This document shows, piece by piece, positions 80-63,165 of a DNA stretch of 64,000 bases. The translations under genes and the position numbers were made by a program. Below the pieces are notes generated by a model. The model had not been told where the DNA came from. It saw nothing but the letters and a program-made list of their open reading frames with translations, and ran no database searches. Each line of letters begins with the position of its first letter. Position 1 is the stretch's first letter. The stretch is from Octopus bimaculoides. Its lineage: Eukaryota. The stretch covers positions 26,360,022-26,424,021 of the forward strand of contig NC_068986.1 of assembly GCF_001194135.2 (NCBI RefSeq), given 5' to 3'.

Positions 80-2368
<2,289 letters not shown>

Positions 2369-4028: not shown

Positions 4029-5011
4029 NNNNNNNNNNNNNNNNNNNNNNNNNNNNNNNNNNNNNNNNNNNNNNNNNNNNNNNNNNNNNNNNNNNNNNNN
4101 NNNNNNNNNNNNNNNNNNNNNNNNNNNNNNNNNNNNNNNNNNNNNNNNNNNNNNNNNNNNNNNNNNNNNNNNNNNNNNNNNNNNNNNNNNNNNNNNNNNN
4201 NNNNNNNNNNNNNNNNNNNNNNNNNNNNNNNNNNNNNNNNNNNNNNNNNNNNNNNNNNNNNNNNNNNNNNNNNNNNNNNNNNNNNNNNNNNNNNNNNNNN
4301 NNNNNNNNNNNNNNNNNNNNNNNNNNNNNNNNNNNNNNNNNNNNNNNNNNNNNNNNNNNNNNNNNNNNNNNNNNNNNNNNNNNNNNNNNNNNNNNNNNNN
4401 NNNNNNNNNNNNNNNNNNNNNNNNNNNNNNNNNNNNNNNNNNNNNNNNNNNNNNNNNNNNNNNNNNNNNNNNNNNNNNNNNNNNNNNNNNNNNNNNNNNN
4501 NNNNNNNNNNNNNNNNNNNNNNNNNNNNNNNNNNNNNNNNNNNNNNNNNNNNNNNNNNNNNNNNNNNNNNNNNNNNNNNNNNNNNNNNNNNNNNNNNNNN
4601 NNNNNNNNNNNNNNNNNNNNNNNNNNNNNNNNNNNNNNNNNNNNNNNNNNNNNNNNNNNNNNNNNNNNNNNNNNNNNNNNNNNNNNNNNNNNNNNNNNNN
4701 NNNNNNNNNNNNNNNNNNNNNNNNNNNNNNNNNNNNNNNNNNNNNNNNNNNNNNNNNNNNNNNNNNNNNNNNNNNNNNNNNNNNNNNNNNNNNNNNNNNN
4801 NNNNNNNNNNNNNNNNNNNNNNNNNNNNNNNNNNNNNNNNNNNNNNNNNNNNNNNNNNNNNNNNNNNNNNNNNNNNNNNNNNNNNNNNNNNNNNNNNNNN
4901 NNNNNNNNNNNNNNNNNNNNNNNNNNNNNNNNNNNNNNNNNNNNNNNNNNNNNNNNNNNNNNNNNNNNNNNNNNNNNNNNNNNNNNNNNNNNNNNNNNNN
5001 NNNNNNNNNNN
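4029..5011. other. Assembly gap (N run); other gaps at 2557-2780, 3191-3375 and 53782-54335
   Basis: Runs of N in the sequence. Confidence 0.99.
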
Positions 5012-14887: not shown

Positions 14888-16418
14888 CAGTGGTGGGCAC
14901 AGCCAACCAAAAAGTTAGCTTTGCTAACTGCTAATCTGCTAACTAAAAAATTAACTTTGCAAATGCTAAACCGCTGAATAGGTAAAAAGAATTAGCTGAA
15001 GCTAATGCTAACTGATAATTGCTAACTTTTATCATATAAATTTAGATTTGGTTTGGTTTTGGGGGCTCTAAAACCCTTAAAAAGCAGACCTAGAGAGCTG
15101 AAATTTTCATGTAGCTTAGACATAGAGACTTCCAAAAAGGTCTAGTATACCAAGATCAGATGACAATCAAGGTTTATGCAAATAATTAAGTGAACAAGTG
15201 AAATTAAACATTAGTTTTTCAGAAATAATATATTTCTAAATCTCTCAGAGAGATCTATGCAGTAGTGGTACGATGAAGTAGTTGTATGCTGTCAACTTAA
15301 TGTGACAGTCCCCTGAAGGGAATAATACTACTGTTGGATAGACCTAGGAAGCTGGACCGCTTCCTGTCGGCCTTGACACATTTCCTGTGTCCTTATGTCA
15401 CATTAAGTTGACAGCATACAACTACTTCATTAGTTTTTCAGTCAACATACACTTTATTTACTGTACTAAACAAAGTATTAAACAAATCAAAAGAGTATAG
15501 TATAGGTATCATGCCAAGATCAGGTGATGATCAAGGTGTACTACTCTGGCTGGGCCTTTTCCGTCGCCTCGACATGATGCTGGTTGCCCTTCATAAATAT
15601 CAGCATCTCAAAGTTACCATCTGACAGGGTGGCTCTCTTGGCCCTAAAAATATCTTTGCCTATAGAGAATAGGTGCTCAAATGCAGCATTGGATGGGATG
15701 GAAATGTTACACTTGGTGAATAGGTTGATCAAGACCTGCTCACTCAAAAAGGTGACTTCAGTCAGGACTGCCTTTGAGATGGCCTCCAGCCAGGTCTTCC
15801 GTTTGTCCCCTCTGTGTGTAGCCCCTCATGTAAAGAAATAAGAATCAGTGAAGATCTGCAGTTTCAGCTGTGTCATCACCCTGTGGATAGCTCCCCTATT
15901 CTTCTCCAGCAGATTGTTGAGGATAATAATAGAGTCGGAGGTAGAGTTCCATCTGGTACTGTTGGGGACCACCAGTCTCCTCTTCAATGTGTCCAGAATG
16001 CTGTCTGTCACCACCATGCTGCGGTTCTGCAGATTCCACAGCTGCTGTGTCTTGGACATGGCTTTCCTGTGGGCCGACTTGAATGAAGCACTGTCAAGTG
16101 CCTTGTCGGTATCCATGCTGGCTACCAAATTGAAGGTATGGGCTGTGCACTTGATGTGCACTGGCATGTTGAGGCCTAGGCTGCAGGACTCATCAAGAAC
16201 AGCATTGACAGAGGTGTACTCAGCTTTGTCCATATCCCAGCCTCGGGATCCACATCCAGGGCCACATCCTCAATGCCCCCCACATCTGGATCGGATGCAG
16301 TCTGAAGAATGTCTGGCAAGATTTCAACTTCTGTACCAAACTGCATAAATGCCTTGACAAAGTTTTTGCCATTGTCTGTTGTGGTCCTGGTCACCTTGTA
16401 TTGCAGATGGAACTTGAG
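14888..16418 (-). mobile_element. hAT (Ac-like) DNA transposon relic: 3' terminus CAGTGGTGGGCA at 14888 plus frameshifted, internally deleted transposase (15541-16418)
   Basis: Motifs VTRTTTDNGKNFVKAF, CTAHTFNL, NSTRWNS and dimerisation domain SNAAFEHLFSIGKDIFRAKRATLSDGNFEMLIFMK. No matching 5' TIR found. Confidence 0.9.
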
Positions 16419-23433: not shown

Positions 23434-45047
<21,614 letters not shown>

Positions 45048-48000
45048 GAAAAACAAAGTGAAAGAAATGTAAAAATAAATACCAACAGAAGTGAAGATTT
45101 CATTGGAGTGTCTACTTTTCTGCCACAAATCCAGCCTTCCAGCTATTAAAACTATTTAACCCAAACAATCATTTCAGCCATCTCTTTTCTAATGCTTCAA
45201 TTTTTTTTTTTTTTTTCTTAAACCTGTACTGCAAGGCCCTTTTAATTTTTTTTTATCTGGCATTCCAATTTTTGTTTCTGGTCCTTGCCATTTAGACTCT
45301 TATGAAGTTGTTTGTATATCAATGTACTAGTTTTACTTTTGTATTTTTCTATTTGAAGAATATGTTGTAATATTTTGTTTTTGATTAAAAATATACTCTC
45401 CTCTTTTAATACCACCATGTCATATTTAGCTAAGATGGCACCAATTCAAGTGTTAAACATCAAGAAATTTGATTCAGCTCAGTGTTTGATTCTGAAATGG
45501 ATCTTGGAACACTTCAAACATTTGCTGGTGCTTAACTGCATTTTTGCTACATTGGGTGCAATGATTTGTCTCCATAGTTATTGAGAAGAAAAAAAAAAAA
45601 AGCAAAACTTTAATTAATATCTGGAAATTTCTTTTCCCAATAAATATAGATTTTTACTAAGTTTATAATATAACTAAAAACAGTTTTCAATATTGTTTTA
45701 TGAAAGTATTTTTAGTTTGAATACTTTCCTGGTAATTATCAAAGCACCATTTAATCTTTCTCTCATCTACATATCTTTTGGCTGGAACAATAATTTGCCA
45801 TTATTATATGGATGTTTTTTTTTTAAAATTTTTTTTATCCCTTCCCAAACATAACTTCCAAATATTTCATAGCTAAATTCTAATTACTGACATCTACTTT
45901 CTGGAGTGTTATTGATGTTTTAAAGAACTATCCCCCCACTTCCACTCTACATGAATGCAACTATTTTGTTTTTGTATGTCAGAAGCGAAGCAGAGAATTT
46001 CTTTGCTTCCATCACAAAATAGCAATTAACTTCTTGGCTTCTTTTAAGTGACCATTTCACTGCTTGGTGCCTGCTGTGATTACCATATTCTTTGGCTGTG
46101 CATGTAGTACTGTGAAAGGTTATGTGTTTTTGTTTAGAACATTGTATGCATTCCAATAATGGATCTACAAGAAAATCACGCTGCGTGTAAGTCATGTGGA
46201 ATATTTTTCTACACTTCCCCTTTTGGTGATAATATGTAAATAAAACTCAGTTTTCTCTTTAATTGTCCTTTGTATGTTTTTTTTCCTCCCCCACTTCTCA
46301 CAAGCTTCATCTGAATTAACTATTTTGCCATCATTTTTTTTTTTTTGTAAACATCATTCTACTCATATTTTCTCTATGAAACTATTCAAATTCAAGATTC
46401 CTAACGAAATTAAATTTGGTTGCTTTTTCTTACTCATTGTTTCGAAAAAGAAAAACGTTATTTAAAAAGTTATTGTAACTATGGTAACTTAAATAAAAGT
46501 GAATAATAATTCTTCAAAAGCTGGAATTTTTTTTTCTTTCCTGAATGTTTTAATTTTCACACTTACTTTGCATGGCTGTGTGCTTAAATTTGCTTTTCAA
46601 CCATGTTTCAAATTTGATCTGTGTGTGGCACCTTGGGCAAGTGTCTTCTACTATACAGCCCTGGGCCAATAAGTCTCATGAGTCGAATTGACAGATGGAA
46701 ACTGTGAAAGCCCGTTGTGTGTAACTGCAGATGCTGACATTCCATCACTTGTTACTAAAATGGTAATGTGCTGATATTACAAACAGCTGATGTGTACCTG
46801 TTCAAAAACCAGTGGAATAAGATTACTGACTTGAAAAACTAGGATTGGTGATAGGAAAGGCATGCTGCATCAAATTTCTATCCAAGTCGAAGTAGCATGG
46901 ATAAAAATTTTAATATCTTTGGAACTAGTGTAAATAATTTACTGTAACGAGGAACTTCTATTTCTACATGATTGGTGCACCACTCTACTTTATGGATATT
47001 GGCAAACAATATATCTGTTCAGCTCGTGGCAGCATACCAACAAAACTAATCTATTTGTCGTAATCCTACCTTCTGATCTAAAGATGTTTGACTCTTATCA
47101 AGTTAAAACAAATCTGCATAAATAGGATATCTTGACTGCATTATATAGTTTTGTTTTGAATCGATGATTGTACTAATTTTTAGGATAACTTAAGACTTGG
47201 ACTTGGCACTTTCAACCTAAGAAGTCACCTGTATTCTTTGCTCAAGTAGCACAAAGCTACAATCCTATAGAATTCCATCATCCCAGTTGTGTGTGGGGGG
47301 GGGGGGGGGGGGGTGCAATGTACCTGGTAACCCTGTCATGAAATTTTTACAGCCAGTTTCAATTTAGATCACAAAATTTGTAGTGTAAAACCAGGGGTGT
47401 TCTTAGGTTGGTATCCAAAGAGTTAAGATTGCAATAGGCTGACTGGTTCTGCAAACTTGGATATTTTGACATTATAAATGTTTTAGTGCTGGCTGGCAAA
47501 TGAACTTCAGAGTTGTGCTGTTCTCTCAAAACCAATATCTACTTCAAGGACAAGTAGAAAAGCTACAGTTTTGTAGACATTTTTTAAGATTACTGTCCTT
47601 TGCAAAATTTCTCTAGAGTAAAATCTGCTAAAGAGCAAGATGAATGAACAAAACTTAATTTTACATGCATTTGATAGGGGAGATAGACTGAGTATTAAGG
47701 GCTCATGGGCATAATTATTTACTGGGTCCCTTTGAATGTGTGTTCTAGTAGAGTTAACATTTAAAGTGCAGGCCCCTCAGGCGCTGCCCATTTGACCAAC
47801 AGCTCAGTCTGCCCCAGCCTTAACCCATTTTACTTGGTATATAACTGGCCGAGATAGACATGGGCACAGAACAAAAAGCTCTGATTATAGGAGAAACATG
47901 AAAAATGGAAATCACATGCTGCTAAATATGGGATTTTCCATTATAAATGAGGAAAATCAGAAGCAGTATGAGCAATGCAAGTATGGTTACTTGACCTAAA

Positions 48001-50152: not shown

Positions 50153-50856
50153 TTTAAGCTGTTGAATTAATTTAACAAATAATTCTAAAGGATTTAAAAG
50201 CGTAGCAAAATCAGCGATGACTTCATTTACTCTACAAATGCTCCAAGTATGTAACAAGTAATTGCATTTGTTGTTGTTACTATATCCATGAAAATAAACA
50301 CCACTGACAATCAAATAGAAAAGTGAGATTTTGCAGTGTTTGGCTCATGATGCAATAGTTTGAAAGATTGCAGAAGAATGAATTTTAGTAACTGAATGAC
50401 AAAAACTGTGCCAACATTTTTTTTTTATTAAGTAACTATGTTCAGTATGGTTTCTTTTGTTTTATAATCAGATCAGTTACTCAAACAAAACACTCTCAGT
50501 TCATTTTGGTCAGATAATCAAGAACTATATATATTTGAGGAAAGTACTTCCAAAATTTGGCTTCAAATTTTGGCATAAGGCTAGTAATTTTAGTGGAAAG
50601 AGTAAGTCCAATTACATTGACACCAGTACTTATTCTAAAAGGATGAGAAGTATAGTCAACTTCAGCAGAATTTGAACTCAGAATACAAAGAGCTGGACGA
50701 AATGTTGCTAAGTATTTTGTTTGATGTGCTGATGATTCTGCCAGCTTGCCACCTTTTAGTACTCTTAAAAATTGGCATAATATTATAAGTTGATGATAAC
50801 TGGATAAAATAATGGAAAACTGTTCAATCAGCTTTGATATTTTCAATTTAATTATT

Positions 50857-51490
50857 TGGTTTAGCCTTATTCAGTTCAACCTTTATTTGGTTCAACAACG
50901 TTATTTGGTTCAGCCTTATTCAGTTCAGCCTTATTCAGTTCAGCCTTATTTGGTTCAGCCTTATTTGGTTCAACTTTATTCAGTTCAACCTTATTTGGTT
51001 CAGCCTTACCCAGTTCAGGCTTATTTGGTTCAACCTTATTCAGTTCAGCCTTGTTCAGTTCAACCTTACTAGGTTCAGCCTTACTCAGTTCAGCCTTACT
51101 CGGTTCAGCCTTATTTGGTTCAACTTTATTCAGTTCAACCTTATTTGGTTCAGCCTTATTTGGTTCAACTTTATTCAGTTCAACCTTACGCAGTTCAGTG
51201 TTATGTGGTTCAGCCTTACTCGGTTCAACCTTATTCAGTTCAGCCTTATTTGGTTCAGCCTTATTTGGTTCAACTTTATTCAGTTCAACCTTATTTGGTT
51301 CAGCCTTATGCAGTTCAGCGTTATGTGGTTCAGCCTTACTTGGTTCAACCTTATTTGGTTCAGCCTTACTCGGTTCAACCTTATTCGTTTCAGCCTTATT
51401 TGGTTCAGCCTTGTTCAGTCCAGCTGTATTCAGTTCAACCTTATTTGGTTCAGCCTTATTTAGTTCAACCTCATTTGGTTCAGTTTTATT
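50857..51490. repeat. 15-bp minisatellite (about 41-42 units, minus-strand consensus AATAAGG(C/T)TGAAC(CA/TG)) with a 120-bp higher-order duplication
   Basis: Units such as ttatttggttcagcc and ttattcagttcaacc are directly visible; the rare variant block gcagttcag(c/t)gttatgtgg recurs 120 bp apart (about 51190 and 51310). Confidence 0.95.
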
Positions 51491-51519
51491 CATACCTGGA
51501 TTCAGTAATTCCCTCAGAT
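50876..51519 (-). CDS. TIR gene exon DLRELLNPG reading on into the (NKAEP/NKVEL)n repeat ORF; an internal donor CAG|GTATGA at 51496 could instead make it a 24-nt micro-exon
   Basis: Acceptor ctaattaacttttttgttttttttccag| with a branch-point-like CTAAT; phase 1 places it in frame with the 205-aa repeat ORF of the track. Confidence 0.55.
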
Positions 51520-54500
51520 CTGGAAAAAAACAAAAAAGTTAATTAGTTACATAAATATCTATTGGTTGTCAGATAAATTCGTTTCTTTTGCTTTCTTTGT
51601 ACTTGGCACTCCATTACACTGTGTAACATTTTTTCTTTTTATTTTCTCTTTAGTTTCTCTTTGCTTCTATCTAGAAATCAAAGGAAATGATCACTATTCC
51701 CTTCAAACTTTGCTTTTGTGACCTGAACATCAATTACACTTCAGACAGCTGAAATAGCAAATATTCTGCTCAATACCACAGATTTGCTTGTCAGTGGTTT
51801 GACCGTAACCACTTGAGCATGTCCCTTAGTGGCTGACACTATGTGCATTTCTGATCATGAGTAGAAGTGGGGAAGTATCATAGCTATGTGTTGAGAAGGA
51901 TTCTTTGAGGTTTGAATAAATGTACAAAAGCAAAGTTTGAAGGAAATATTAACCATTTTTCATACTTTCTAGGGGTAAGCAAACAAGAAATAACAGTTGC
52001 TACCCAAGGACAAAAATCACGTTACACAGTGTTGTTATATTTGAAAAGAGGTAAAGTTTTTTCAAATTTCAAAATTGGTAAAAATAAAACTTGTAGGAGG
52101 AAGATTAGATCTACAAAAAGAAAAAGAAGAAAAAAAAGAAACCTATAAAACACTATGATAAAAATATTTTCATGTTAATTTAAATAATATAGTGAAAAAT
52201 TTAAACAAATGGGAAAAAAATGAACACGTTTACTGGATAACACAATAAACTATTTTAAGATATTCAGTGGTAAACAAAACTCTGATGGTATTTTGGCTTA
52301 AACATTATCAAGTCATATTTAATTGCATTTTAACCATATTTAGGATCATCCTTGTTAGAAAGTAAACTTGTAACAAGTAGTCATGCTGAATATGTAGTTT
52401 TCTCTCCTCGCATTCCGCATTCCCTTTTCAGCACTTCCCGTTGAATTCTCTTTGTATTTTCTCACAAGAAGGAAGTGAGTCACTTAAAGGGCTCCAATAA
52501 ATACATGAGTTTATTCCAGCATGGAACATGATTCAAACACCCAAGTGGAAGTTTACAAGGATTACAAGAAATGTAATAACAGAAGATGTATCTCCAAACA
52601 TGTTCATATCATTCTCCTAGTAATTAGCAATAGGCTTTTCTTCAGGTAAAACAAAAAGGGGAACTCAAGGAAATAACCCTTAAAGATAATCATCCATTTG
52701 AGATGGGCTAATTGTTCTAATGGAGAACGTGTTGAAGGCACATGTGTGGCATAAATGCTGAGAGGGTCCCATACAGGTTTGTCCTTGCTGAAAGTCAATC
52801 GCCTACTGGATCCTTTTTGGCATGCAGCCAAAGCTAACAGTTGAAAGGATGCCACCTATTGAGGTAGCCTAAAAACACTCAACTGCCAAGGGAGATTACT
52901 TCAACCATGTTGTTTACAGATTGATGTAACAACTATCACCAAACCATCTGTGCTACAAACTAAATAAATGGCTAATTAGAGTTGATATTGAGTCATAACT
53001 AACAATTCATCATCATCATTTAATGTCCACGTTCCCACGATTGCATGAATTAGACTGAATTTATTGAGGCAGATTTTCTATAGCCAGAAGCCCTTCCCAT
53101 CACCCGTTTCCAAGAAAAGTAAATTTTTCTCATAACTAGACATGTTTTTCACAGAAGGCTAGAAACAAACAACCTTGCTTCTATGACAATGATGTTCATT
53201 TACAACCAAAATGTGATGTCAAGACAAGGGTACACACAAACGCACATGTATGCACACACACATGCATGCATATGTACACAATGGGCTTTCTGTTTAACAA
53301 ATCCACTCACAGGGCTTTGGTTGACCCAGGGATATAGTGGAAGACATTTGCCAAAGGTGCAACTCAGTGAGTCTGACCCCAGGACCACATGGTTGGGAAG
53401 CAACCATGTGGTTATAAACACCTGTGTCTATAGCGGATTCCTATAAGGTTGTTATCCACCCCTGATTGGAACTCTCCCGTATGACATGTACGCATGCTCA
53501 GTGACTTGCTTTAACTACCGCAGACGCAAATACTGTTGTATATGCAGCCACTATAGAGGGAAGAATGTAGACGGCAAAGTTATTTCACTATATAAATATC
53601 CTGAAAACGTAGCTATTTGTCGTATTTGGCTTCAGAGATCGAGACTTGTAAGGAAAGACTTTGTTTACACTGCAAATAGCCAAATGTGTTCCCAGCATTC
53701 CGTCAATTTTAATGGACCATCGAAAGATCACCCCTTGCCATCCGTTTTGCCAAACAAAGTATTTAAAATATCAGTAAGTGCNNNNNNNNNNNNNNNNNNN
53801 NNNNNNNNNNNNNNNNNNNNNNNNNNNNNNNNNNNNNNNNNNNNNNNNNNNNNNNNNNNNNNNNNNNNNNNNNNNNNNNNNNNNNNNNNNNNNNNNNNNN
53901 NNNNNNNNNNNNNNNNNNNNNNNNNNNNNNNNNNNNNNNNNNNNNNNNNNNNNNNNNNNNNNNNNNNNNNNNNNNNNNNNNNNNNNNNNNNNNNNNNNNN
54001 NNNNNNNNNNNNNNNNNNNNNNNNNNNNNNNNNNNNNNNNNNNNNNNNNNNNNNNNNNNNNNNNNNNNNNNNNNNNNNNNNNNNNNNNNNNNNNNNNNNN
54101 NNNNNNNNNNNNNNNNNNNNNNNNNNNNNNNNNNNNNNNNNNNNNNNNNNNNNNNNNNNNNNNNNNNNNNNNNNNNNNNNNNNNNNNNNNNNNNNNNNNN
54201 NNNNNNNNNNNNNNNNNNNNNNNNNNNNNNNNNNNNNNNNNNNNNNNNNNNNNNNNNNNNNNNNNNNNNNNNNNNNNNNNNNNNNNNNNNNNNNNNNNNN
54301 NNNNNNNNNNNNNNNNNNNNNNNNNNNNNNNNNNAACAACCATTCACTGATTTGGCCATGAGCATGATGAGGTATAGAAGAGGTAGGGACAGTCACACTA
54401 TAAAGTCTAATAATTAGAGGAATATTAGATTCAATGCTGTAAATTTATTATTTAATCAAACAAACACACACACACACACATATATATATATACACACAAA

Positions 54501-57500
54501 AATAAGAGGAATGACCAGCAAAAGTGGACTTCTATATGCTAGAAATAGATGCCGATTCGGCACTTTAGCTGGTCATTCCTCTTATTTTTGTGTGTATATA
54601 TATATATGTGTGTGTGTGTGTGTTTGTTTGATTAAATAATAAATTTACAGCATTGAATCTAATATTCCTCTAATTATTAGACTTTATAGTGTGACTGTCC
54701 CTACCTCTTCTATACCTCATCATGCTCATGGCCAAATCAGTGAATGGTTGTTGAAAGCAGATTGGGATCAGGCAATACTTCTGCTTATTCCTGTCTGAAG
54801 TATCAGACTTATCGTCCTATGAATTTACTTCGTTGACATATCGACAGAATTTTTATACCTTTCAACCTTTCAATCAAGTCCGCCTTTCTTCCAGTAACAT
54901 ACTGTCCATATAATCTTAATTATTTCTTTAACTCAGGCACAGTAAGTACTTCGATAGCTGAATCATCGAATTGCTTTATATCCATGATAAGACGTAAAAC
55001 AATAACAATAGCGTAGATAGTCTGCGGAAGTTTAATTGTCTACATGGAGCGCCGCCTAGCCAAGGGAGATAACCTACTTATAGGAAAGCCCTATAGCGTA
55101 GATAGTCTGCGGAAGTTTGTCTACATGGAGTGCTGCCTAGCCAAGGAAGATAACCTACTTATAGGAAAGCCCTATAGCTAAACATTACAAAAAGAAAAAT
55201 TAAACATAAAACAAAAAATTAATATCTTTATAGCTATATCTATGCACACCCACACACAAAAGCTTCACACTGTCTTGGCTCAAAGAGAACCAAATCACAT
55301 TGTTAACGAGCAACTTTTATTGTTAAAAACTTATATTTTAAGATACATAAGTACAAAGGCAGTACAAGGCAACCAGACGTCATTCACGACCAAATATTGC
55401 TTAGTAATATGTGCCATACTTTTGCTAATTGGTTTAGGTATCTATGTAGTTGTGAGCTGATATAAATACCTTCTTGGCTCCCTCATCTTTGACCCAGAGG
55501 CATATCTAGGATGTGACAGATGGATGGAAAGATAGCTGTACCAAAACTCAGCTTCACTACAGTTGAGAATTAAACCCACAACCTTAGAATCATGAGCTGG
55601 ACATTCTAACCACCAGTCCACATGCCTTTATTCACCTGCATAAAAACACCCTTTAATATCAATGTATGCCATTGCATGCTATATTAATCTCAGTATCCAT
55701 CCATTCACTGGCCTCATCCTTACTACTAGGTAATCTATCCTGTTTTGATAATCTTCCCTTTACCTTAAATAATAAGCAACTAGAATGTAATCAAAATGGC
55801 TAACTTTTCCATCCTAAATATATGCCTATGTGAGATGTGGTTTCCTTTTTAGCAGTAGAAGCAATTCTCTCTAGGTAAATAGGTACTGGAAAGACTCTTC
55901 TCTAACAAGTTAGTGACCATTACGTCTCTGTCAAGTTAGATGAATTCCAATATAAATTAGAGGTGAGTTGGCAACAAAAGGACTCTCTTTCAGAGTGAAA
56001 GGTAGACTATATGATGCTTGTGTGTGAACAGCTAATACTCCATGGTAGTGAGACATGGGCTCTGAATGCAGAAGACATGTGTAGACTGGAGATAAATGAA
56101 GGTAGTATGCTCTGTTGGATGTGCAACATCAGTGTGCATGTACAGCAAAGTGCAAATGGATTGAGAGAAAAGTTGGGCATAAGAGGAATCAAATGTAGAG
56201 AAGACTACATTGGTTTGGACATGTGATGCATATGAATGAGGACAAAGAAAAATAATGTAATATATTACATCCTGTAACACCAGAAGGCTACAGAAAAGAT
56301 ATGATGACAGATTCACTTAGTGAAGAAAAGAGCAAACATGAATGAGTTCGAAAACGTTTTAATCGATGTGATTAGATCATGGATTATTCTGAATAAAAGC
56401 ATATTGTGTTTATATGAATTAGAATATCATATAACAGAATTGTATTTGACCTGACAGTGGCACACTTAGTTGCAGTAACAATGAAAAGAAATAAGTATGA
56501 AAGAGGTGACTAAAGCAAGGAATATGAATGGATATCTAATAAAGATTCATACATGTATAAAGTTAATAATTAAGGACATTAAGACAAGAAAAGATGCAGG
56601 TCCATCAAAAGATAGTTGTTGAATGTTGAAAGTACTAGAATTTGCTGGTACTTTACTAATTACCTACTAAGTTTATTAAGTTACACTATTTTCAAAAGTA
56701 TATACAACAGTGACAATATCTGTAGCTTCACATTGTATACAAGTAACAACAGGAGCCTCAAGAAATTAGGCAAATTCAGAGAGTCTAGCAAAGTTAGAAC
56801 AGTTTAGATATGATACTGTTTGGGTTTGCAGTTGAGATAGAATAACAGGTGCTACATTTTTAGTGATCTCTTCAGAAGAACTGATTTTGCATTCACTTAC
56901 CTCTAGGTTTCTCAGTGGCCCCAAACACCTGAAAAAAATGAAACATAAATAAATGACTTAGAATAGTTTTAATGGATAATTCAGTGTACAGGTAAGTGTT
57001 CATAGGGCTCTGTCTTTAAATAAGTATTCATCATCATCATCATCGTTTAACATCCGCTTTCCATGCTAGCATGGGTTGGATGATTTGACTGAGGACTGGT
57101 GAAACCAGATGGCTACACCAGGCTCCAATCTGATTTGGCAGAGTTTCTACAGCTGAATGCCCTTCCTAACGCCAACCACTCAGAGAGTGTAGTGGGTGCT
57201 TTTACGTGTCACCCGCACGAAGGCCAGTCAGGCGGTACTGGCAACGGTCACGCTCAAATTGGTACATTTTATGTGCCACCCACACAAGAGCCAGTCCAGT
57301 ATTATAATTCTAGAAACAAGAACCAAAGGTTTAGAACGAGATGTTTTTAGAAAATGATAACTTGCTTCTCGTGGCAGTTTGTCAAGGAGCTTCAAAATCT
57401 AAAAGAGGGCAATTTTCAGTCCAGTAGTATAAAATACAACATAGTAATATACAAATTACTAACCAAGTACATGACATTTAAATTTCATGTGGGAAGTTGC

Positions 57501-60500
57501 CGTATACAGTATGTGGCAAAAGAGAAGATTGTGGACTTTAGCAACAACAAACAAACTAAAGATGTAAATGTGATATCTAATAAACTGACAGAGAAGCAGG
57601 ACTATGAATGCATTAGAGGAATGGAAGGGTTACCAATAGGGGTAGCAATAAATAGTAGTGCCGAGGCTATTCAAGACATGCATTTGTTGTAATTTATAAT
57701 TATTGTTAACTAGGTGAGTTAAGAAATACTGAAGAAGGTCGAGAGAAAGTAACAACAGTGTGCAAGTAGAAGTTCAATCTTGACATGTGTGAATAACTGC
57801 AAATACACACACACACACAGAGTCATCAAGGATAGAAAATGATCTTACATTTCAGATCATAATGCAGAGAAGTTTATAGGGGGAATGTTTAAATGTGGAG
57901 AGCAAGCTTATGGCTGGATGTTCTTCCTAATGTGGAGAGCCACTTATGGCTGGATGTTCTTCCTAACACCAACCACTTTACAGAGTGTACTAGGTGCTCT
58001 TTATATGTTGCTGGAATGGGGGCTTTTTCATGTGATGCCAACATGGGTACCTTTTCGTGTGGCACTAGTACAAGTGCTTATTTACATAGAGCCAGCATGG
58101 GTGAACTAACTGGCATAGGTGCTTGTTACATGGCACCGACACGAGTGCATGTCTACATGACACCAACATGGGATCGCCAGAGAAGATACTTGGCTACCCC
58201 AGTAGGGTAAAGAAGTGGAGGGAGGTGGAAGAGTGTGAGAAAGAGAAAGATAGAGACAATAAGAGAGAGAGAGAGAGCTGGTGCATAGAGAACAGTGGAG
58301 GGAAGTATAAGTAGTACAGATGGGACAGAGATGTTCCATAAGCATGTGAGGGGAGATATTTAGAGATAGCAAGTGATGGTAAGAGGTACTAGAGGCCTGC
58401 AGTGGGTGGTGGTGTTTTAGGGAGATGATTTGTGGTGAGCTTTGCCAGAGGACAGAATTATGTGTAGGGAGAAGGGAGTGGGTTTAGGGCCATAAAGGAC
58501 ATGTCTGTATGTGTGGGTAGCCATGATTTTATTTAGCTTGACGTATTTTCTCAAGCAAAGCAAATTGCCATACACATAGTGTACCTTGGTGTCTGTAGCC
58601 ATGCTTACATTTGTTTATGTAACCTAGTGGTTCAACAAACAAAAATTGATACAGTTAGTACCAAGCTTAAAACAGGCTCTAAGGTCATTCTGCTTAACAA
58701 GGTGTTGCAGATAGCATGGACATGGTTGAATGACTGAAACCAGCATATAAGAAAAAGAAAACAGCAACTTTAAAAAAAAACAAATTAATTATATTTTTAC
58801 TTACATTGACTACATTATTGTGACCTGCTTGCATGATGGCATTTTGAACATAAATGATGGATTTAGGTGGTACTAGTGATGTCGATTCAGGTTCTATATC
58901 TTTAAAATATTTTTCAATTTTTTTCTCTTTGTTGCTTTTTTGCCAATCTATTTTTCTATAAGAACTAATTCCAAAATCGTTCTGTTTTACATTTCTATTT
59001 TCTATAATAACTATTCTATTTGGTTCCATTCGAATTAATTCATCTCTCAGATGCTGAGTTCTCTCATCATTTTCCATATTTTCTGTTATGAGCAAAACAA
59101 TAACACTACACTTTTGTGTGATTTCACTCAAATGATCAAAAATTTTATTTTTTCTTGTATTTATCTCGTTATATAGATTACATTTACATTTTGATACCTT
59201 GGAAATTTGGTCAACAACATCAGAAGCTAATGCTTCATCATCATCATGATGAAAGACACAAATACCATGTTCACGGCTGTTTTTGAAGTTGGTAGGGGAA
59301 GATCCTAAAACCAAAAAAACATATACAACGTTACGGTGTGTAGTGATATATAACTATTAATTAAATCTGATATTTTAATAGTGTTTTAGATAATAACAAT
59401 CATCATCATCATTATTTAACATCCATTTTCCTTGCTGGTATGGGCTGGACAGTTCAACAGGTGCTGACAAGCCACAGGATGGTACCAAGTTCCAATGTCT
59501 GTCTTGGTATGGTTTCTATGGCTGGATGTTCTTCCTAACACTTTACAGTATATTGGGTGCTTTTTACAAGGCACTGGCACTAGTGAGGCCACTTGGTAAC
59601 TTGCAAGACAAGACTCCTCAACTACTGAAGGGAGTAGTATTAAGGGAGTTGGCTTTTTACCAGGTGATGAGAGGTTAAAGTAAGATAGACAGAGACAAGA
59701 ACAAGTGTTTTGCTGTAGCAGAGATACATGATTACCTCAGCTGGGAAAAGAAAGAGAATGGTTGTGAAGATGTGTCAGGGTGAATCCTCAAGTTACAGCA
59801 AGGTGAATATAAGTGATATGGGTGGGTAAGTAAGTATGCAGGAGTGAGAGAGATGAGTGACAGGTGGATAGAGATAGGGGTAGTAGGAAATGCAGTGAGT
59901 TGTGAACATGTGTGGAAGCATGCCAGCAGGCATATCAAAGTAAATCCAATATCCATCATTGGTTTTATTATTGGATAACATTAGACTTAGCATCTTGCTA
60001 GCTCTAAGATGGATCTATAAGATAATACTTTTCAGACAGGGAGCCTGAACAGCCCTTCAGGTCCTGTCAAACCATCCAACCTATGCCAGCATGGAAAATG
60101 GACGTTAAATGATGAAAGGGGCAGTAAAAAGGGGAGCAAAACAGCAGAACTGGTAAACTGTTAGAGAAAATCTCTTGCAGTGTTTAGATAGACACCTTTA
60201 TATGTTAAGTTTTAAACTTGCTAAAATCAGCTTTAACTTTCTTCTTTTTGGGAATGAAAAATAATTACAAGCCAAGTACTAGGGCTTACTAAAACTGACT
60301 TCACCTGTACTTTATTTACATTATTTACATTCGATGGATATTTGTCCTCATCTTGTTTGTTGTTAACACAATGTTTCGGCTGATATACCCTCCAGCCTTC
60401 ATCAGGTGTCTTGGGGAAATTTCAAACCTGAGTTCTCATTCCTAAGGTATTTTTCGATGTTGTTGTTATTATTATTATTAAGGTCACTGTTTGGAATTGA

Positions 60501-62263
60501 ACTCAGAATCTTGGGGTTAGTAGTCCACTCTTTTAACCACTATGCCATATGCCTGTGGGCAATTATGGAGTGAATTTTAGGGCTTATAAATCTAATATTC
60601 TCCTATCCTTCCTTAATACCGGTATATCAGCCGAAACATTGTGTTAACAACAAACAAGATGAGGACAAATATCCGTCAAATATAAATAAGGTAAATAATT
60701 CCTCATCCCTTAAATATAGAAGTTTTAATTGTACTGTCCAACTTTGTGTCCCTGTAAGAAACGATGATTTAGGCAGAGAAGGGAAGGTAACTCCAATAAC
60801 AGTAGCAGGTTTTTCTAGAATAGTTAGGTCAATGTCATAGAATTCAATGTAAATTGCTGGACGATACAAATAAATCACTGAAAAATTGCTGTTTTACACA
60901 GCCTACACTTCAGACAATCAATTAATAAAACTTCAAAGTGACTAAGAGCTCTTATGTTGTCATTTAAACCAAATTAATATCTTAAATTAGACTAGGGCAG
61001 TTGGTAACAGAGAAAATACCATGTACTGTTTAGTTACACTAATTCTTTTACTCTTTTACTTGTTTCAGTCATTTAACAGTAGCCATGCCGGAGCACCGCC
61101 ATTAGTCGAGCAAATCGACCCCAGGACTTATTCTTTGTAAGCCTAGTACTTATTCTACCAGTCTCTTTTGCCGAACTGCTAAGTTACAGGGACGTAAACA
61201 CACCAGCATCGGTTGTCAAGCGATGTTGGTAGGACAAACACAGACACACAAACATACACACACACACATATACATATATATGCATATATACGACGGGCTT
61301 CTTTCAGTTTCCGTCTACCAAATCCACTCACAAAGCTTTGGTCGGCCCGAGGCTATAGTAGAAGACACTTGCCCAAGGTGCCACGCTGTGGGACTGAACC
61401 AGGAGCATGTGGTTCATAAGCAAGCTACTTACCATACTCCTCTGACAAAGTCAACTTTACATTTCATCCTTCTGAAGTAAATAAAGTAAAATAGTAATGA
61501 AGTACTGGGGTTGGTAAAATAAAGTACTAGTATACATATAACCAACCATATATCTCCCCCAAAATGTGTAGCCTTGTACTCATGTTAGAAATTTATATTT
61601 TAGCTATATCACATTAAAAGTAAAAAGACTAACACATACATTATATGTTACCAAGAAGCTTGGTCTATAAGAATTTGCAGTAACCATTATTATCATCATC
61701 ATCATCAGCATCATTTAAGGTCCATTTTCTATGCTGGCATGGGTTGGACAGTTTGACAGGATTTGATGGTCCCAAAGATTGCATCATACTCCTGTGTCTG
61801 TTTCGAATGGTTTCTACAGTTAGATGCCCTTCCTAATGCCAATCACTTTACAGTGTGTACCGAGTGCTTTTTCATACCATCAGCACTATTGGGGTCACTG
61901 TGCAGTTTGCAAGACTACAGAGCTTGAGTAGAAAGGTGGGGGTGCTTTATGCCAATAGCACAAGGAGTAGAGAGGGGTAAAGTACAAGAGAACAGGATGA
62001 GAGCAGAATGGGTTTCTTGCTGAAGAAGAGCTATATGACTATCTGTGTTTTAGAAGAGTGGATGAGTGGGGGGAAGAGTTAGAAAATTGTGATAAGGTGC
62101 CAGAGTGTGAAAAATATATTGTAAGGGGAGTTTGTACCAAGACATGTAATGAAGAGAATTAAATAAAATTAGGTCACTTGAAGATGAAATCACAATGTAA
62201 CAGGCAACTTGACATACCTGAACAATGAATGTTAGAAACAGTATTTGATCCGTTGCCCTCCAT
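50876..62263 (-). CDS. TIR-domain protein with RHIM-like motif and pentapeptide-repeat tail; proposed join of minus-strand exons 62263..62218, 59304..58805, 56928..56901, 51519..50876 (1218 nt = 405 aa + stop)
   Basis: Four exons with canonical splice signals and compatible phases (1,0,1) give one uninterrupted ORF. The 3' exon structure is less certain than the TIR exon. Confidence 0.6.
53486..53773 (+). pseudogene. THAP zinc-finger exon of the transposon (CCICSHY..ISLYKYP..IW..R..CSQH..LPSV)
   Basis: C2CH spacing and the conserved P, W and CSxH residues of THAP; the canonical HF is HS here. Ends at a GTAAGT donor just before an N-gap. Confidence 0.85.
54336..54751. repeat. Long inverted repeat: 191-bp arms 54336-54526 and 54561-54751, 34-nt loop
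   Basis: Arms are reverse complements including a mirrored (CA)n(TA)n tract; one mismatch seen near the loop; the left arm starts at the gap edge. Confidence 0.93.
54860..54985 (-). pseudogene. SAP-domain ORF start of the transposon second gene (MDIKQFDDSAIEVLTVPELKK*LRLYGQYVTGRKADLIERLK)
   Basis: Manual translation matches the SAP pattern LTVxELKxxLRxxGxxxxGxKADLIERL; one in-frame TAA at 54920-54922 explains its absence from the ORF track. Confidence 0.8.
55008..55178. repeat. Tandem duplication of the transposon right end (85-bp and 81-bp units) bounded by ATAGC
   Basis: Units 55008-55092 and 55093-55173 differ by a small indel and a few substitutions. Confidence 0.92.
55983..56245 (+). 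mobile_element. RTE LINE RT C-terminal fragment
   Basis: LSFRVKGRLYDACV..LHGSETWALNAEDM.RLE.NE.SML.WMC..LREKLGI..LHWFGHV. Confidence 0.85.
56901..56928 (-). CDS. TIR gene 28-nt micro-exon (VFGATEKPR-)
   Basis: Strong acceptor gtttcatttttttcag| and donor GAG|GTAAGT; phase 0 in, phase 1 out. Confidence 0.7.
58805..59304 (-). CDS. TIR gene main exon: TIR/TIR_2-like domain (about 59269-58904) followed by RHIM-like segment SIIYVQNAIMQAGHNNVVN (58861-58805)
   Basis: 500-nt stop-free exon; acceptor gtttttttggttttag|, donor AAT|GTAAGT. Pattern ICVFHHDDDEALASDVVDQI..CNLYNE..IFDHLSEITQKCSVIVLLITENM fits the TIR bA-aA-bB-aB-bC order. Confidence 0.82.
60311..60700. mobile_element. Penelope-like element remnant with inverted terminal segments (about 78-bp arms 60311-60389 and 60621-60698)
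   Basis: Arms are reverse complements with a few mismatches; it carries the CTGATGA..GAAAC motif characteristic of Penelope pLTRs. Confidence 0.65.
60366..60409 (-). ncRNA. Minimal type-I hammerhead ribozyme motif (probably degenerate) within the Penelope-like repeat
   Basis: Minus strand reads ACAC-CUGAUGA-A-GGCUG-gagggtatat-CAGCC-GAAAC-AUU-GUGU: both core boxes, a perfect 5-bp stem II, and stem I ACAC/GUGU. Confidence 0.65.
61044..61437 (-). mobile_element. tRNA-derived SINE, same family as 5871-6316
   Basis: Colinear similarity over about 390 bp. Confidence 0.88.
62218..62263 (-). CDS. TIR gene first coding exon (MEGNGSNTVSNIHCS-G); exon 62270..62218 includes 7 nt of 5' UTR
   Basis: Minus-strand acceptor atttttatag|, ATG in ATTATGG context, donor CAG|GTATGT; phase 1 matches the TIR exon acceptor. 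Confidence 0.7.
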
Positions 62264-62419: not shown

Positions 62420-62945
62420 CATTACCTATCTGGGCATTTCGATTTTCATGTGTTTTCATATCATTCACGTATCCTGCTTTTGACAATAGAACATGATCAC
62501 ATATAATACATATCCAATGTTTACTGTTGATTACAGTTCCAACTGTTCCTTTATGACAATCTCTTTTAAGCTCAGAGTGCTGAAACATCTTTTCCTCCCA
62601 AGCATTGCACCTCTCCACTTGTTCCGATCTAGAACATCATTTTTCCTTATCACTTTTGTTCATATCTAGTTTCTTCAGGTTTTCCTTCACACAATCTTTA
62701 TACCTTTTCCTTGGCTTATGTTGTGGTTGCTTACCAGAGTTGAACTCATCATAAAAAGACACTTGGCAAACGCTTGTTTTTCATTCTAATAACATGTCCA
62801 GTCCATCTCATTTGAGCCAAAGTAACATGTTGTTCAATTGAGCTACAACATGCCATGAACAAAACTTCTGTATCTGGTATGAAACATTCCCACTTGACTC
62901 CTAAGATATGTCTAAAGCACTTTTGATGAAATCTCTCATGAAATT
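62420..62945 (-). mobile_element. RTE-type LINE 3' ORF fragment ending in a C2H2-like finger
   Basis: ERFHQKCFRHILGVKW..PDTEVL..SIE..AQMRWTGHVIRM..RLP followed by CIICDHVLLSKAGYVNDMKTH. Confidence 0.8.
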
Positions 62946-62949
62946 TCAA

Positions 62950-63165
62950 GCGTGGCCGTTGCCAGTACCGCCTGACTGGCCTTCGTGCCGGTGGCACGTA
63001 AAAGCACCCACTACACTCTCGAAGTGGTTGGTGTTAGGAAGCTGTAGAAACTCTGCCAAATCAGATTGGAGCCTGATATAGCCACTTGGTCCACCAGTCC
63101 TCAGTCAAATCGTCCAACCCATGCTAGTATGGAAAGCGGACGTTAAACGATGATGATGATGATGA
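62950..63165 (+). mobile_element. RTE LINE 3' end with (GAT)n tail; related copies at 5095-5250 (+), 57029-57297 (-), 14650-14760 (-), 48333-48470 (-), 59400-59600 (-), 61700-61880 (-)
   Basis: Shared motif ...cagtcaaatcgtccaacccatgctagcatggaaagcggacgttaaacgatgatgat. Confidence 0.8.

What the first reader, a model, noticed from the sequence alone, without database searches (positions are those of the whole stretch)
58805..62263. TIR domain followed by a RHIM-like motif: TRIF/TICAM-like adaptor architecture in a probable cephalopod
Seen: a 500-nt exon encodes a TIR-like fold and then, after a short Pro/Ser linker, SIIYVQNAIMQAGHNNVVN(V). A phase-matched upstream exon supplies the ATG, and no transmembrane or LRR region is visible, so this looks like a cytosolic adaptor. 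Established: RHIMs have a (I/V)Q(I/V/L/C)G core preceded by an I-Y-x-x-N-type strand and followed by xxN-hydrophobic (RIPK1 IQIG, RIPK3 VQVG, TRIF VQLG), and they form signalling amyloids. TIR followed by a C-terminal RHIM is the TRIF/TICAM layout, usually regarded as chordate. Inference: this may be an unrecognised lophotrochozoan TIR-RHIM adaptor, homologous or convergent, that links TLR-type signalling to amyloid-based death/NF-kB signalling. Caveat: the core MQAG is non-canonical.
Basis: partly seen in the sequence, partly recalled or inferred. Interest (0 to 1): 0.85.

Follow-up and report, generated by a model that had tools for sequence, protein, structure and literature searches.

The report
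Fast-evolving octopus TIR-domain protein
This is a real Octopus bimaculoides gene for a small cytosolic immune-type TIR-domain protein, found only in octopods and evolving faster than its own introns, but the proposed RHIM (amyloid death-signalling) motif after the TIR does not pass any RHIM test.

Summary
The full 4-exon, 405-aa model equals RefSeq XP_014786310.1 of Octopus bimaculoides, which carries the misleading name "kinase kinX".

The TIR call is supported:
- Two AlphaFold models return almost only TIR domains from the PDB.
- Sequence and profile comparisons beat shuffled controls for TRAM, TRIF and TIRAP, but not for SARM1.
- No Pfam TIR model reaches its curated cutoff, and the Pro-Gly BB-loop is absent.

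The RHIM call is not supported:
- Pfam RHIM detects RIPK1 and TRIF control peptides but none of the three octopod peptides.
- The strict consensus fails.
- A profile comparison with RHIMs is no better than column shuffles (p about 0.1).
- In Argonauta hians the xQxG core is not kept in register.

There is no TRIF N-terminal domain, no pLxIS motif and no TRAF6 motif. The family was detected only in Octopoda.

New finding: exon 2 differs 15.8% between O. bimaculoides and O. sinensis, against about 7% for the flanking introns. dN/dS is about 1.5 and the reading frame is intact, which points to positive selection.

Best reading: a lineage-specific orphan TIR adaptor or regulator with a disordered pentapeptide-repeat tail.

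The parts
62218..62263 (-). Coding exon 1: ATG and MEGNGSNTVSNIHCS plus the first base of Gly16. The donor is G|GTATGT.
   Evidence: The spliced model is identical to XP_014786310.1. The O. sinensis orthologue has the same exon.
58805..59304 (-). Coding exon 2 (500 nt): TIR domain, Pro/Ser linker and the Q/N/G-rich segment. The exon boundary directly after the segment is conserved in O. sinensis and Argonauta.
58895..59266 (-). TIR domain, residues 29-152, with beta-A to alpha-E topology.
   Evidence: AlphaFold models. Foldseek top hits are MyD88, TRAM, MAL, TIR-STING and TLR10 TIRs. hhalign and Smith-Waterman against TRAM, TRIF and TIRAP. Weak Pfam hits to TIR_2 and CAP12-PCTIR_TIR, both below cutoff.
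58862..58894 (-). Pro/Ser-rich linker EPESTSLVPPK, residues 153-163. It has 0% identity to the Argonauta sequence.
58805..58861 (-). Beta-prone Q/N/G-rich segment SIIYVQNAIMQAGHNNVVN, residues 164-182. The core MQAG lies at 58834..58823. This is the proposed RHIM-like motif. The invariant pattern across octopods is N-x5-G-x-N-x-V-x-N.
56901..56928 (-). Coding exon 3 (28 nt): VFGATEKPR plus one base. Reading through its donor gives ...PRGK*, the same ending as O. vulgaris CAI9724215.
50876..51519 (-). Coding exon 4 (644 nt, including the TGA stop): DLRELLNPGM followed by about 42 pentapeptide repeats of the type NK(A/V)E(P/L). It is encoded by a 15-bp minisatellite at 50852..51483.

Best explanation
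The locus encodes a 405-aa cytosolic, octopod-specific 'orphan' TIR-domain protein. It has a short N-terminus, one TIR domain of the TLR-adaptor type (most like TIRAP, TRAM and TRIF), a Pro/Ser linker, a conserved beta-prone Q/N/G-rich 19-mer, and a long disordered pentapeptide-repeat tail.

Shown here: the gene structure, the TIR fold, the restriction to Octopoda, and a rate of protein change above the local neutral rate with the reading frame preserved.

Inferred: it acts as an adaptor, regulator or decoy in TIR-TIR signalling assemblies of the Toll/IL-1R type. Positive selection would then reflect conflict with pathogens, or co-evolution with fast-evolving receptors. The 19-mer is probably a short interaction or self-association element whose mode of action is unknown. 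It is not a demonstrable RHIM.
For: Gene model:
- Four GT-AG exons give a product identical to XP_014786310.1.
- The locus is collinear with O. sinensis LOC115213021. The same exon is present in Argonauta hians.

TIR domain:
- The Foldseek PDB hit lists are dominated by TIR domains for both models. Model pLDDT is 46.9 and 69.8, and the best E-values are 3e-4 to 5e-4.
- hhalign of the octopod profile gives z 8.7 for TRAM, 5.1 for TRIF and 4.2 for TIRAP. MyD88, SARM1 and CheY give z below 1.
- hhalign against a TRAM+TRIF profile gives E 5.3e-5 over 128 columns.
- Single-sequence Smith-Waterman gives O. bimaculoides-TIRAP z 12.4, O. sinensis-TIRAP z 5.9, and Argonauta-TRAM, -TRIF and -MyD88 z about 4.
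- The comparison sequences were checked against PDB chains.

Cytosolic, single domain: no transmembrane segment and no other domain.

Lineage restriction: only three clusters were found among 1.84 billion representatives, all from octopods.

Fast evolution with function retained:
- Exon 2 divergence is 15.8%, against 6.7% and 7.1% in the flanking introns.
- Nonsynonymous change against intron change gives Fisher p 1.6e-8. Only 3.6% of random sets of 78 substitutions keep the ORF open.
- dN/dS is 1.5 for the exon and 1.37 for the TIR domain. All indels are in frame.
Against: - No Pfam TIR family reaches its curated cutoff. The best are CAP12-PCTIR_TIR at 14.1 bits against 24.7, and TIR_2 at 13.5 bits against 28.
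- A HMMER profile of the family finds no TIR in the PDB. The Argonauta and O. sinensis TIR sequences alone find nothing.
- The models rest on a 4-sequence alignment and have only modest confidence.
- The BB-loop Pro-Gly used by TLR adaptors is absent.
- No expression, interaction or localisation data were available.
- The role in Toll-type signalling is inferred from the domain family only.
- dN/dS comes from a single species pair.
Confidence: 0.6

Rival explanations
1. The protein is a TIR-RHIM adaptor, TRIF-like by homology or by convergence. After TIR-driven recruitment, the SIIYVQNAIMQAGHNNVVN segment would form a cross-beta (amyloid) assembly that recruits other motif-bearing proteins for NF-kB or death signalling.
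For: - The segment lies outside the TIR fold, after a Pro/Ser linker. It is beta-prone and rich in Q, N and G.
- It shares QxGxNN with RIPK1 and RIPK3 (alignment).
- It is 79% identical between Octopus species and keeps N-x5-G-x-N-x-V-x-N in Argonauta, where the neighbouring linker has 0% identity.
- Its position at the 3' end of the TIR exon is conserved.
- The TIR is closest to TRAM, TRIF and TIRAP.
- Loosely defined 'cryptic RHIMs' (VxxG) are accepted in insect and shrimp immune proteins, and RHIM-bearing RIPK homologues are reported from molluscs (review PMC13506858).
Against: - Pfam RHIM gives no hit for three octopod peptides, while the RIPK1 and TRIF controls score 23.6 and 41.8 bits.
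- The strict consensus is absent from the window.
- The profile comparison with RHIMs is not better than shuffles (10.5% reach the score).
- The spacing from the IY strand to the core is one residue longer than in RIPK1 and RIPK3.
- Argonauta has VQGANS. Either the Q shifts by one position or six residues (NAIMQA) are missing.
- The motif is not more constrained than the TIR domain (omega 1.34 against 1.37; Octopus-Argonauta identity 26-32% against 40%).
- No second motif-bearing gene was seen in the window or in the two orthologous loci.
- 223 residues follow the motif in the main isoform.
Confidence: 0.1
2. The TIR is an enzyme, an NAD+ hydrolase or cyclase of the SARM1, bacterial or TIR-STING kind, acting as an effector rather than a scaffold.
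For: - TIR-STING, SPARTA and AbTir NADase TIRs are among the Foldseek hits.
- The best Pfam hit for the window protein is the CAP12/Pycsar effector TIR.
- A glutamate in helix alpha-C (E104 in RDEL) is invariant in all four sequences.
Against: - SARM1 gives no sequence signal (z -0.4 to 1.5).
- The aromatic residue four positions before the catalytic Glu (the W of the WxxxE motif) is His or Gln here.
- E104 lies three residues further from strand beta-C than the catalytic Glu of TLR2-type or plant-type TIRs. In the hhalign alignment it does not fall on the equivalent TRAM position.
- The equivalence could not be settled with these tools.
Confidence: 0.12
3. The gene is a young or decaying locus drifting without protein-level function, and the TIR-like and RHIM-like features are remnants.
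For: - dN/dS is at or above 1 between Octopus species, and 0.6-0.9 against Argonauta.
- The repeat tail is highly variable.
- No relatives were detected outside Octopoda.
Against: - The ORF, the exon boundaries and all indels are in frame in three genera.
- Only 3.6% of random substitution sets keep the ORF open, even for the closest pair.
- Exon divergence exceeds intron divergence 2.3-fold. Drift cannot produce that.
- Core TIR positions are invariant.
Confidence: 0.08

Closest known systems
TRIF / TICAM-1 (vertebrate TIR adaptor with a C-terminal RHIM)
   Same: - A cytosolic protein with one TIR domain, followed downstream by a short beta-prone Q/G/N segment.
- The TIR shows detectable sequence similarity (hhalign z 5.1; with TRAM, E 5e-5).
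- It shares the LL(L/I)T(E/S)N(F/M) strand beta-C and the H-x-x-D-type strand beta-A.
   Different: - No TRIF N-terminal domain, no pLxIS, no TRAF6 sites and no EDFxxPG BB-loop (PMC7075850).
- The motif fails the Pfam RHIM model and the consensus.
- A long repeat tail follows the motif.
- TRIF-like TIRs are reported only from jawed vertebrates, and no intermediates were found.
TIRAP/MAL and TRAM/TICAM-2 (small TIR-only bridging adaptors)
   Same: - Small proteins with a short N-terminus and one TIR domain.
- These give the best sequence matches: phmmer against TIRAP chains E 0.25, O. bimaculoides-TIRAP Smith-Waterman z 12.4, TRAM hhalign z 8.7.
- TRAM and MAL are among the top Foldseek hits.
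   Different: - No N-terminal myristoylation signal (the protein starts MEG, not MG) and no recognisable PIP2-binding motif.
- The BB-loop Pro-Gly is absent.
- Extra C-terminal segment and repeat tail.
- Similarity is far too low to claim orthology.
Molluscan orphan TIR-only proteins (for example the 17 TIR-only 'OrTIR' genes of Aplysia, PMC9334734)
   Same: A lophotrochozoan cytosolic protein whose only recognisable domain is a TIR. It belongs to a lineage-specific, diversified repertoire, and its function is unknown.
   Different: - So divergent that Pfam does not call the TIR, and the reference annotation names it after its repeat tail.
- Detected only in Octopoda.
- Carries a conserved post-TIR segment and a coding minisatellite tail.
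Cryptic RHIMs of Drosophila IMD, PGRP-LC and PGRP-LE, insect STING and shrimp SRB2; HET-s-type amyloid signalling motifs
   Same: A short hydrophobic/Q/G/N segment in an invertebrate immune-type protein that deviates from the vertebrate I/V-Q-I/V-G core (review PMC13506858).
   Different: - The cRHIM definition (VxxG) is too loose to test membership.
- No amyloid data exist for the octopus segment.
- No partner protein carrying the same motif was found.

Membership tests
TIR domain superfamily | Profile match at or above the curated Pfam threshold (TIR, TIR_2 and related families) | tested here: not met
   The best hits are CAP12-PCTIR_TIR at 14.1 bits (cutoff 24.7) for the window protein, and TIR_2 at 13.5 bits (cutoff 28) for O. 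sinensis. Argonauta gives none.
TIR domain superfamily | Flavodoxin-like five-stranded beta-A to alpha-E fold that superposes on solved TIR domains | tested here: met
   Two AlphaFold models (pLDDT 46.9 and 69.8) show the beta-alpha-beta order. Foldseek top hits are almost all TIRs (MyD88, TRAM, MAL, TIR-STING, TLR10, Hydra TRR-2), with E down to 3e-4 and TM about 0.55. The alignment is shallow, so confidence is moderate.
TIR domain superfamily | Sequence similarity to bona fide TIRs above composition-matched chance | tested here: met
   hhalign against TRAM+TRIF gives E 5.3e-5 over 128 columns. The z-score is 8.7 for TRAM, while CheY and SARM1 are below 1. In Smith-Waterman tests, 0 of 300 shuffles reach the score for O. 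bimaculoides-TIRAP, O. sinensis-TIRAP, O. sinensis-TRAM, Argonauta-TRAM and Argonauta-MyD88.
TIR domain superfamily | BB-loop (Box 2) with conserved Pro-Gly | tested here: not met
   The region between beta-B and alpha-B reads LYNEINTRKNKIF, with no Pro-Gly. Motif definitions are from PMC7075850.
RHIM (Pfam PF12721) | Match to the RHIM profile at or above the gathering score (20 bits) | tested here: not met
   No hit at E<=10 for the 50-aa peptides of O. bimaculoides, O. sinensis and Argonauta. The same call scores RIPK1 at 23.6 bits and TRIF at 41.8 bits.
RHIM (Pfam PF12721) | Core consensus [IV]Q[ILV]GxxNx[MLI] (as given in PMC9440496) | tested here: not met
   The sequence is MQAGHNNVV. Q, G and N match, but the three hydrophobic positions are M, A and V. 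There are zero strict matches in the window or in either orthologous locus.
RHIM (Pfam PF12721) | Core tetrad conserved among orthologues | tested here: not met
   It is kept in O. sinensis and O. vulgaris (MQAG). Argonauta has YVQGANSVIN, so either the Q shifts by one position or six residues are missing.
RHIM (Pfam PF12721) | Forms amyloid fibrils and mediates homotypic interaction | not testable with these tools
   This needs ThT and EM assays, nucleation assays in cells, and partner pull-downs.
TICAM (TRIF/TRAM) family | TRIF N-terminal domain, pLxIS motif and TRAF6-binding PxExx(Ar/Ac) motifs | tested here: not met
   No Pfam TRIF-NTD hit. Regular-expression searches for [NDQEKR]LxIS and PxExx[FWYDE] find none.
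TICAM (TRIF/TRAM) family | TIR groups with TICAM TIRs rather than with other TIR families | tested here: inconclusive
   TRAM, TRIF and TIRAP score best with the family profile. However, Argonauta alone scores MyD88 and TLR2 equally well. Only six reference TIRs were compared, and no phylogeny is possible at 15-20% identity.
TICAM (TRIF/TRAM) family | Orthologues traceable across taxa or shared synteny | tested here: not met
   Only octopod sequences were found in 1.84 billion representatives and in the 5.8 billion-sequence index. The neighbouring genes are Exo70 and a REEP-like gene.

The most novel reading that the evidence does not exclude
Octopods have independently built a TIR adaptor whose post-TIR Q/N/G segment is a non-canonical amyloid-type (RHIM/cRHIM-like) self-assembly switch. 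The whole protein is under an arms race with pathogens. This would be a convergent, TRIF-like 'TIR plus prion-like motif' signalling module in a lophotrochozoan.
Probability: 0.1. Interest if true: 0.8.

Novelty: new member of a known kind. Interest (0 to 1): 0.38.

Why it matters
- **Annotation.** Cephalopod innate immunity is poorly charted. This gene is an unrecognised TIR protein, named after its low-complexity tail and carrying no Pfam assignment. It adds a lineage-specific adaptor candidate to the octopus Toll pathway.
- **Evolutionary signal.** An exon that diverges more than twice as fast as its introns while staying in frame is a clear sign of adaptive evolution. It marks the gene as a likely point of host-pathogen conflict.
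- **The larger claim.** A TIR-RHIM or TRIF-like module outside chordates would change views on the origin of MyD88-independent and amyloid-based signalling. That claim is not supported by any test available here.

Tried and rejected
- **HMMER searches for TIR matches.** A HMMER profile of the family against PDB sequences returned no TIR. phmmer of the Argonauta and O. sinensis TIRs against PDB returned nothing. Detection by HMMER alone is therefore marginal.
- **Search for relatives.** The word-indexed and the exhaustive protein searches found no relatives outside Octopoda.
- **Motif-only search.** A search of the big database with the motif alone was not run. E-values are capped at 10, so a 32-residue profile could only find near-identical motifs. 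A negative result would have said nothing.
- **Genomic context of isoform X2.** The exact-match look-up for O. sinensis isoform X2 failed. Isoform X1 worked.
- **Literature.**
  - No paper cites these accessions.
  - The paper that looked relevant for 'RHIM and mollusc' (PMC6294789) concerned Molluscum contagiosum virus, not molluscs. In the paper checked for RIPK genes in Mollusca (PMC10825024), 'Mollusca' appeared only in a cited title about gasdermin.
- **Rejected explanations.**
  - A transmembrane receptor: no hydrophobic segment.
  - A kinase ('kinX') or 'sporozoite surface protein': these names come from the repeat tail only.
  - A SEFIR domain: SEFIR structures rank below TIRs in Foldseek and there is no Pfam hit.
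  - TRAF6 or pLxIS motifs: none present.

Full report
**1. What is in the sequence**

The gene lies on the minus strand and has four GT-AG coding exons:

| Exon | Coordinates | Length | Content |
|---|---|---|---|
| 1 | 62263..62218 | 46 nt | ATG and the first 15 codons |
| 2 | 59304..58805 | 500 nt | TIR domain, linker, Q/N/G segment |
| 3 | 56928..56901 | 28 nt | VFGATEKPR |
| 4 | 51519..50876 | 644 nt | Repeat tail and TGA stop |

The 405-aa product is identical to RefSeq XP_014786310.1 of Octopus bimaculoides. That record is named 'probable serine/threonine-protein kinase kinX isoform X1', and another isoform is named 'sporozoite surface protein 2-like'. These names can only derive from the tail. 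The tail consists of about 42 pentapeptide repeats of the type NK(A/V)E(P/L), encoded by a 15-bp minisatellite with 41.9 copies at 50852..51483.

The protein is laid out as follows:
- residues 1-28: N-terminus
- residues 29-152: TIR-like domain
- residues 153-163: linker EPESTSLVPPK
- residues 164-182: SIIYVQNAIMQAGHNNVVN
- a short spacer, then the repeat tail

There is no hydrophobic segment (maximum Kyte-Doolittle 19-residue mean 1.22). No other Pfam domain was found.

**2. Relatives**

An exhaustive phmmer search of 1.84 billion representatives found only three clusters:
- the O. bimaculoides protein itself;
- O. sinensis LOC115213021, with the O. vulgaris proteins CAI9724214 and CAI9724215 in the same cluster, at 68-70% identity;
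- Argonauta hians GAB1611125, at 34% identity.

Word-indexed searches with the single protein and with a family profile found nothing more.

The window is collinear with the O. sinensis locus over the whole gene and beyond. In both O. sinensis and Argonauta the TIR and the segment lie in one exon that ends directly after V(V/I)N. The family is therefore detectable only in Octopoda.

**3. Is it a TIR?**

Evidence from HMMER alone is marginal:
- Pfam gives CAP12-PCTIR_TIR at E 0.048 for the window protein and TIR_2 at E 0.1 for O. sinensis. Both are below the curated cutoffs.
- phmmer against PDB sequences hits only TIRAP chains, at E about 0.25.
- The family profile and the other two orthologues find no TIR in the PDB.

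Three other lines agree that it is a TIR:

(a) Structure prediction.
- The model of the O. bimaculoides exon has pLDDT 46.9, and the model of the Argonauta TIR has pLDDT 69.8 and pTM 0.64. Both show the beta-A/alpha-A ... beta-E/alpha-E order.
- Foldseek against the PDB returns almost only TIR domains at the top: TIR-STING, MAL, TRAM, MyD88, TLR10 and Hydra TRR-2. The best E-values are 3e-4 to 5e-4.

(b) Profile comparison.
- hhalign of the octopod TIR profile gives these z-scores against shuffled targets: TRAM 8.7, TRIF 5.1, TIRAP 4.2, TLR2 2.8. MyD88, SARM1 and the non-TIR control CheY are all below 1.
- Against a TRAM+TRIF mini-profile the alignment spans 128 columns, with E 5.3e-5.

(c) Single-sequence comparison.
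- Smith-Waterman scores of each orthologue exceed all 300 shuffles for several adaptor TIRs. O. bimaculoides-TIRAP gives z 12.4, O. sinensis-TIRAP z 5.9, and Argonauta-TRAM and Argonauta-MyD88 z about 4. Argonauta-TRIF (z 3.9) was reached by 1 of 300 shuffles.
- SARM1 never exceeds its shuffles.

Shared signatures are the beta-A strand, CVFHHDDDEAL against TRAM's VILHAEDDTDEAL, and the beta-C strand, LLITEN(M/F) against TRAM's LLLTENF and TIRAP's LLITPGF.

The canonical BB-loop Pro-Gly is missing.

Conclusion: this is a TIR domain of the animal adaptor type, too divergent for curated profiles.

**4. Is the following segment a RHIM?**

- **Pfam profile.** In one call, the Pfam RHIM model scored control peptides of RIPK1 (23.6 bits) and TRIF (41.8 bits). 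It returned nothing at E<=10 for the 50-residue peptides of the three octopod species.
- **Consensus.** The published consensus [IV]Q[ILV]GxxNx[MLI] (PMC9440496) is not met. MQAGHNNVV matches Q, G and N only. The strict pattern is absent from the window and from both orthologous loci.
- **Profile comparison.** hhalign of the octopod segment against a RIPK1/RIPK3/TRIF alignment aligns only six columns (QAGHNN against QIGAYN). The score is 10.2, and 10.5% of column-shuffled nulls reach it. Leave-one-out controls score 13.8-29.6.
- **Conservation within Octopus.** The segment is 79% identical between O. bimaculoides and O. sinensis.
- **Conservation in Argonauta.** The sequence there is NVVYVQGANSVIN. 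An ungapped alignment moves the Q next to the G and puts the conserved Asn at G+2. The gapped BLAST alignment instead deletes NAIMQA.
- **What is invariant.** Only N-x5-G-x-N-x-V-x-N is kept across all sequences.
- **Constraint.** The segment is not more constrained than the TIR. Omega is 1.34 against 1.37, and Octopus-Argonauta identity is 26-32% against 40%.
- **TRIF features.** None is present: no TRIF-NTD, no pLxIS and no TRAF6 motifs.

The literature places TRIF-like TIRs only in jawed vertebrates (PMC7075850) and finds no TICAM in Aplysia (PMC9334734). Loosely defined 'cryptic RHIMs' (VxxG) do exist in arthropod immune proteins (PMC13506858). That definition is too permissive to serve as a test.

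The segment is a conserved, beta-prone element at a fixed position, so an interaction or self-association role remains possible. RHIM membership, however, fails every test that could be run.

**5. An unexpected property: very fast evolution**

All comparisons below are between O. bimaculoides and O. sinensis.
- Exon 2 differs at 15.8% of aligned sites. The 1 kb of intron on either side differs at 6.7% and 7.1%. Fisher's exact test gives p 5.8e-9.
- Nonsynonymous differences alone, compared with the introns, give p 1.6e-8.
- Nei-Gojobori dN is 0.186 and dS is 0.122, so omega is 1.5. For the TIR domain alone omega is 1.37.
- All indels are multiples of three.
- Only 3.6% of random sets of 78 substitutions keep the reading frame open.
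- The frame is also intact in Argonauta.

Drift cannot make an exon diverge faster than its introns. The simplest reading is recurrent positive selection on a functional protein, as seen in genes at host-pathogen interfaces. This rests on one species pair. Gene conversion from an unseen paralogue is the alternative to exclude.

**6. Mechanism**

Most likely (about 0.6): a lineage-specific orphan TIR adaptor, regulator or decoy that joins TIR-TIR assemblies of the Toll pathway.
- The post-TIR segment would be a short interaction element.
- The repeat tail would be a disordered spacer of variable length. RefSeq isoforms are 405, 390 and 340 aa, O. sinensis proteins are 268 and 253 aa, and Argonauta has no tail.

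Rivals:
- An amyloid or RHIM-like switch (about 0.1).
- An NADase-type TIR (about 0.12). A Glu in alpha-C is invariant, but its equivalence to the catalytic Glu is unresolved and SARM1 shows no similarity.
- A drifting, non-functional locus (about 0.08). The intact frame and the exon/intron contrast argue against this.

**7. Verdict**

- The TIR interpretation holds.
- The RHIM/TRIF interpretation does not.
- The gene is a new, unrecognised member of the known class of molluscan orphan TIR proteins. It is notable for its octopod restriction, its TIRAP/TRAM-like signatures and its signature of adaptive evolution.

Noticed in passing
window 58805-59304 versus flanks 57945-58785 and 59325-60311: The coding exon diverges 15.8% from O. 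sinensis, while both flanking introns diverge about 7%. dN/dS is about 1.5 and the frame is intact. This is an exon evolving faster than the local neutral rate.
   Followed up: yes
window 50852-51483 (minus-strand coding): A 15-bp coding minisatellite (41.9 copies, 78% matches, no indels) encodes about 42 NK(A/V)E(P/L) pentapeptides. Copy number differs between RefSeq isoforms (405, 390 and 340 aa) and between species. The repeats are absent in Argonauta. They are the source of the misleading 'kinX' and 'sporozoite surface protein' names.
   Followed up: partly
window 53486-53780 (+), inside intron 3: An ORF with a THAP zinc-finger match (Pfam THAP, E 2e-4, just below the cutoff), cut off by an assembly gap of Ns at about 53780-54340. 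It is probably a transposon-derived fragment.
   Followed up: partly
window ~42489-47228, e.g. ORF 43874-44077 (+): A block 92% identical to the O. sinensis region that carries a TB2/DP1/HVA22 (REEP-like) gene on the opposite strand. The ORF reads like a REEP exon. In Argonauta the upstream neighbour of the TIR gene is Exo70.
   Followed up: partly
window ~61700-61915, ~59399-59608, ~57030-57208: Several copies of one roughly 200-bp interspersed (SINE-like) repeat lie in the introns. They match many places in the O. sinensis locus at 70-74% identity.
   Followed up: no
window 56898-56928: Reading through the exon-3 donor gives ...EKPRGK followed by a stop. This is the same C-terminus as O. vulgaris model CAI9724215 (193 aa). 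Such a short isoform would end just after the Q/N/G segment and lack the repeat tail.
   Followed up: partly
window 62749-62997 (-) and 15826-16233 (-): Two ORFs that look like transposable-element remnants: a reverse-transcriptase-like C-terminal piece and a hAT-like piece. Neither gave a Pfam hit at E<=0.1.
   Followed up: partly
window 83-2243, 42295-42544; N runs ~3100-3300 and ~4000-5000: Long CA/TA microsatellite tracts and several assembly gaps. They produce long spurious ORFs in the mechanical ORF list.
   Followed up: no
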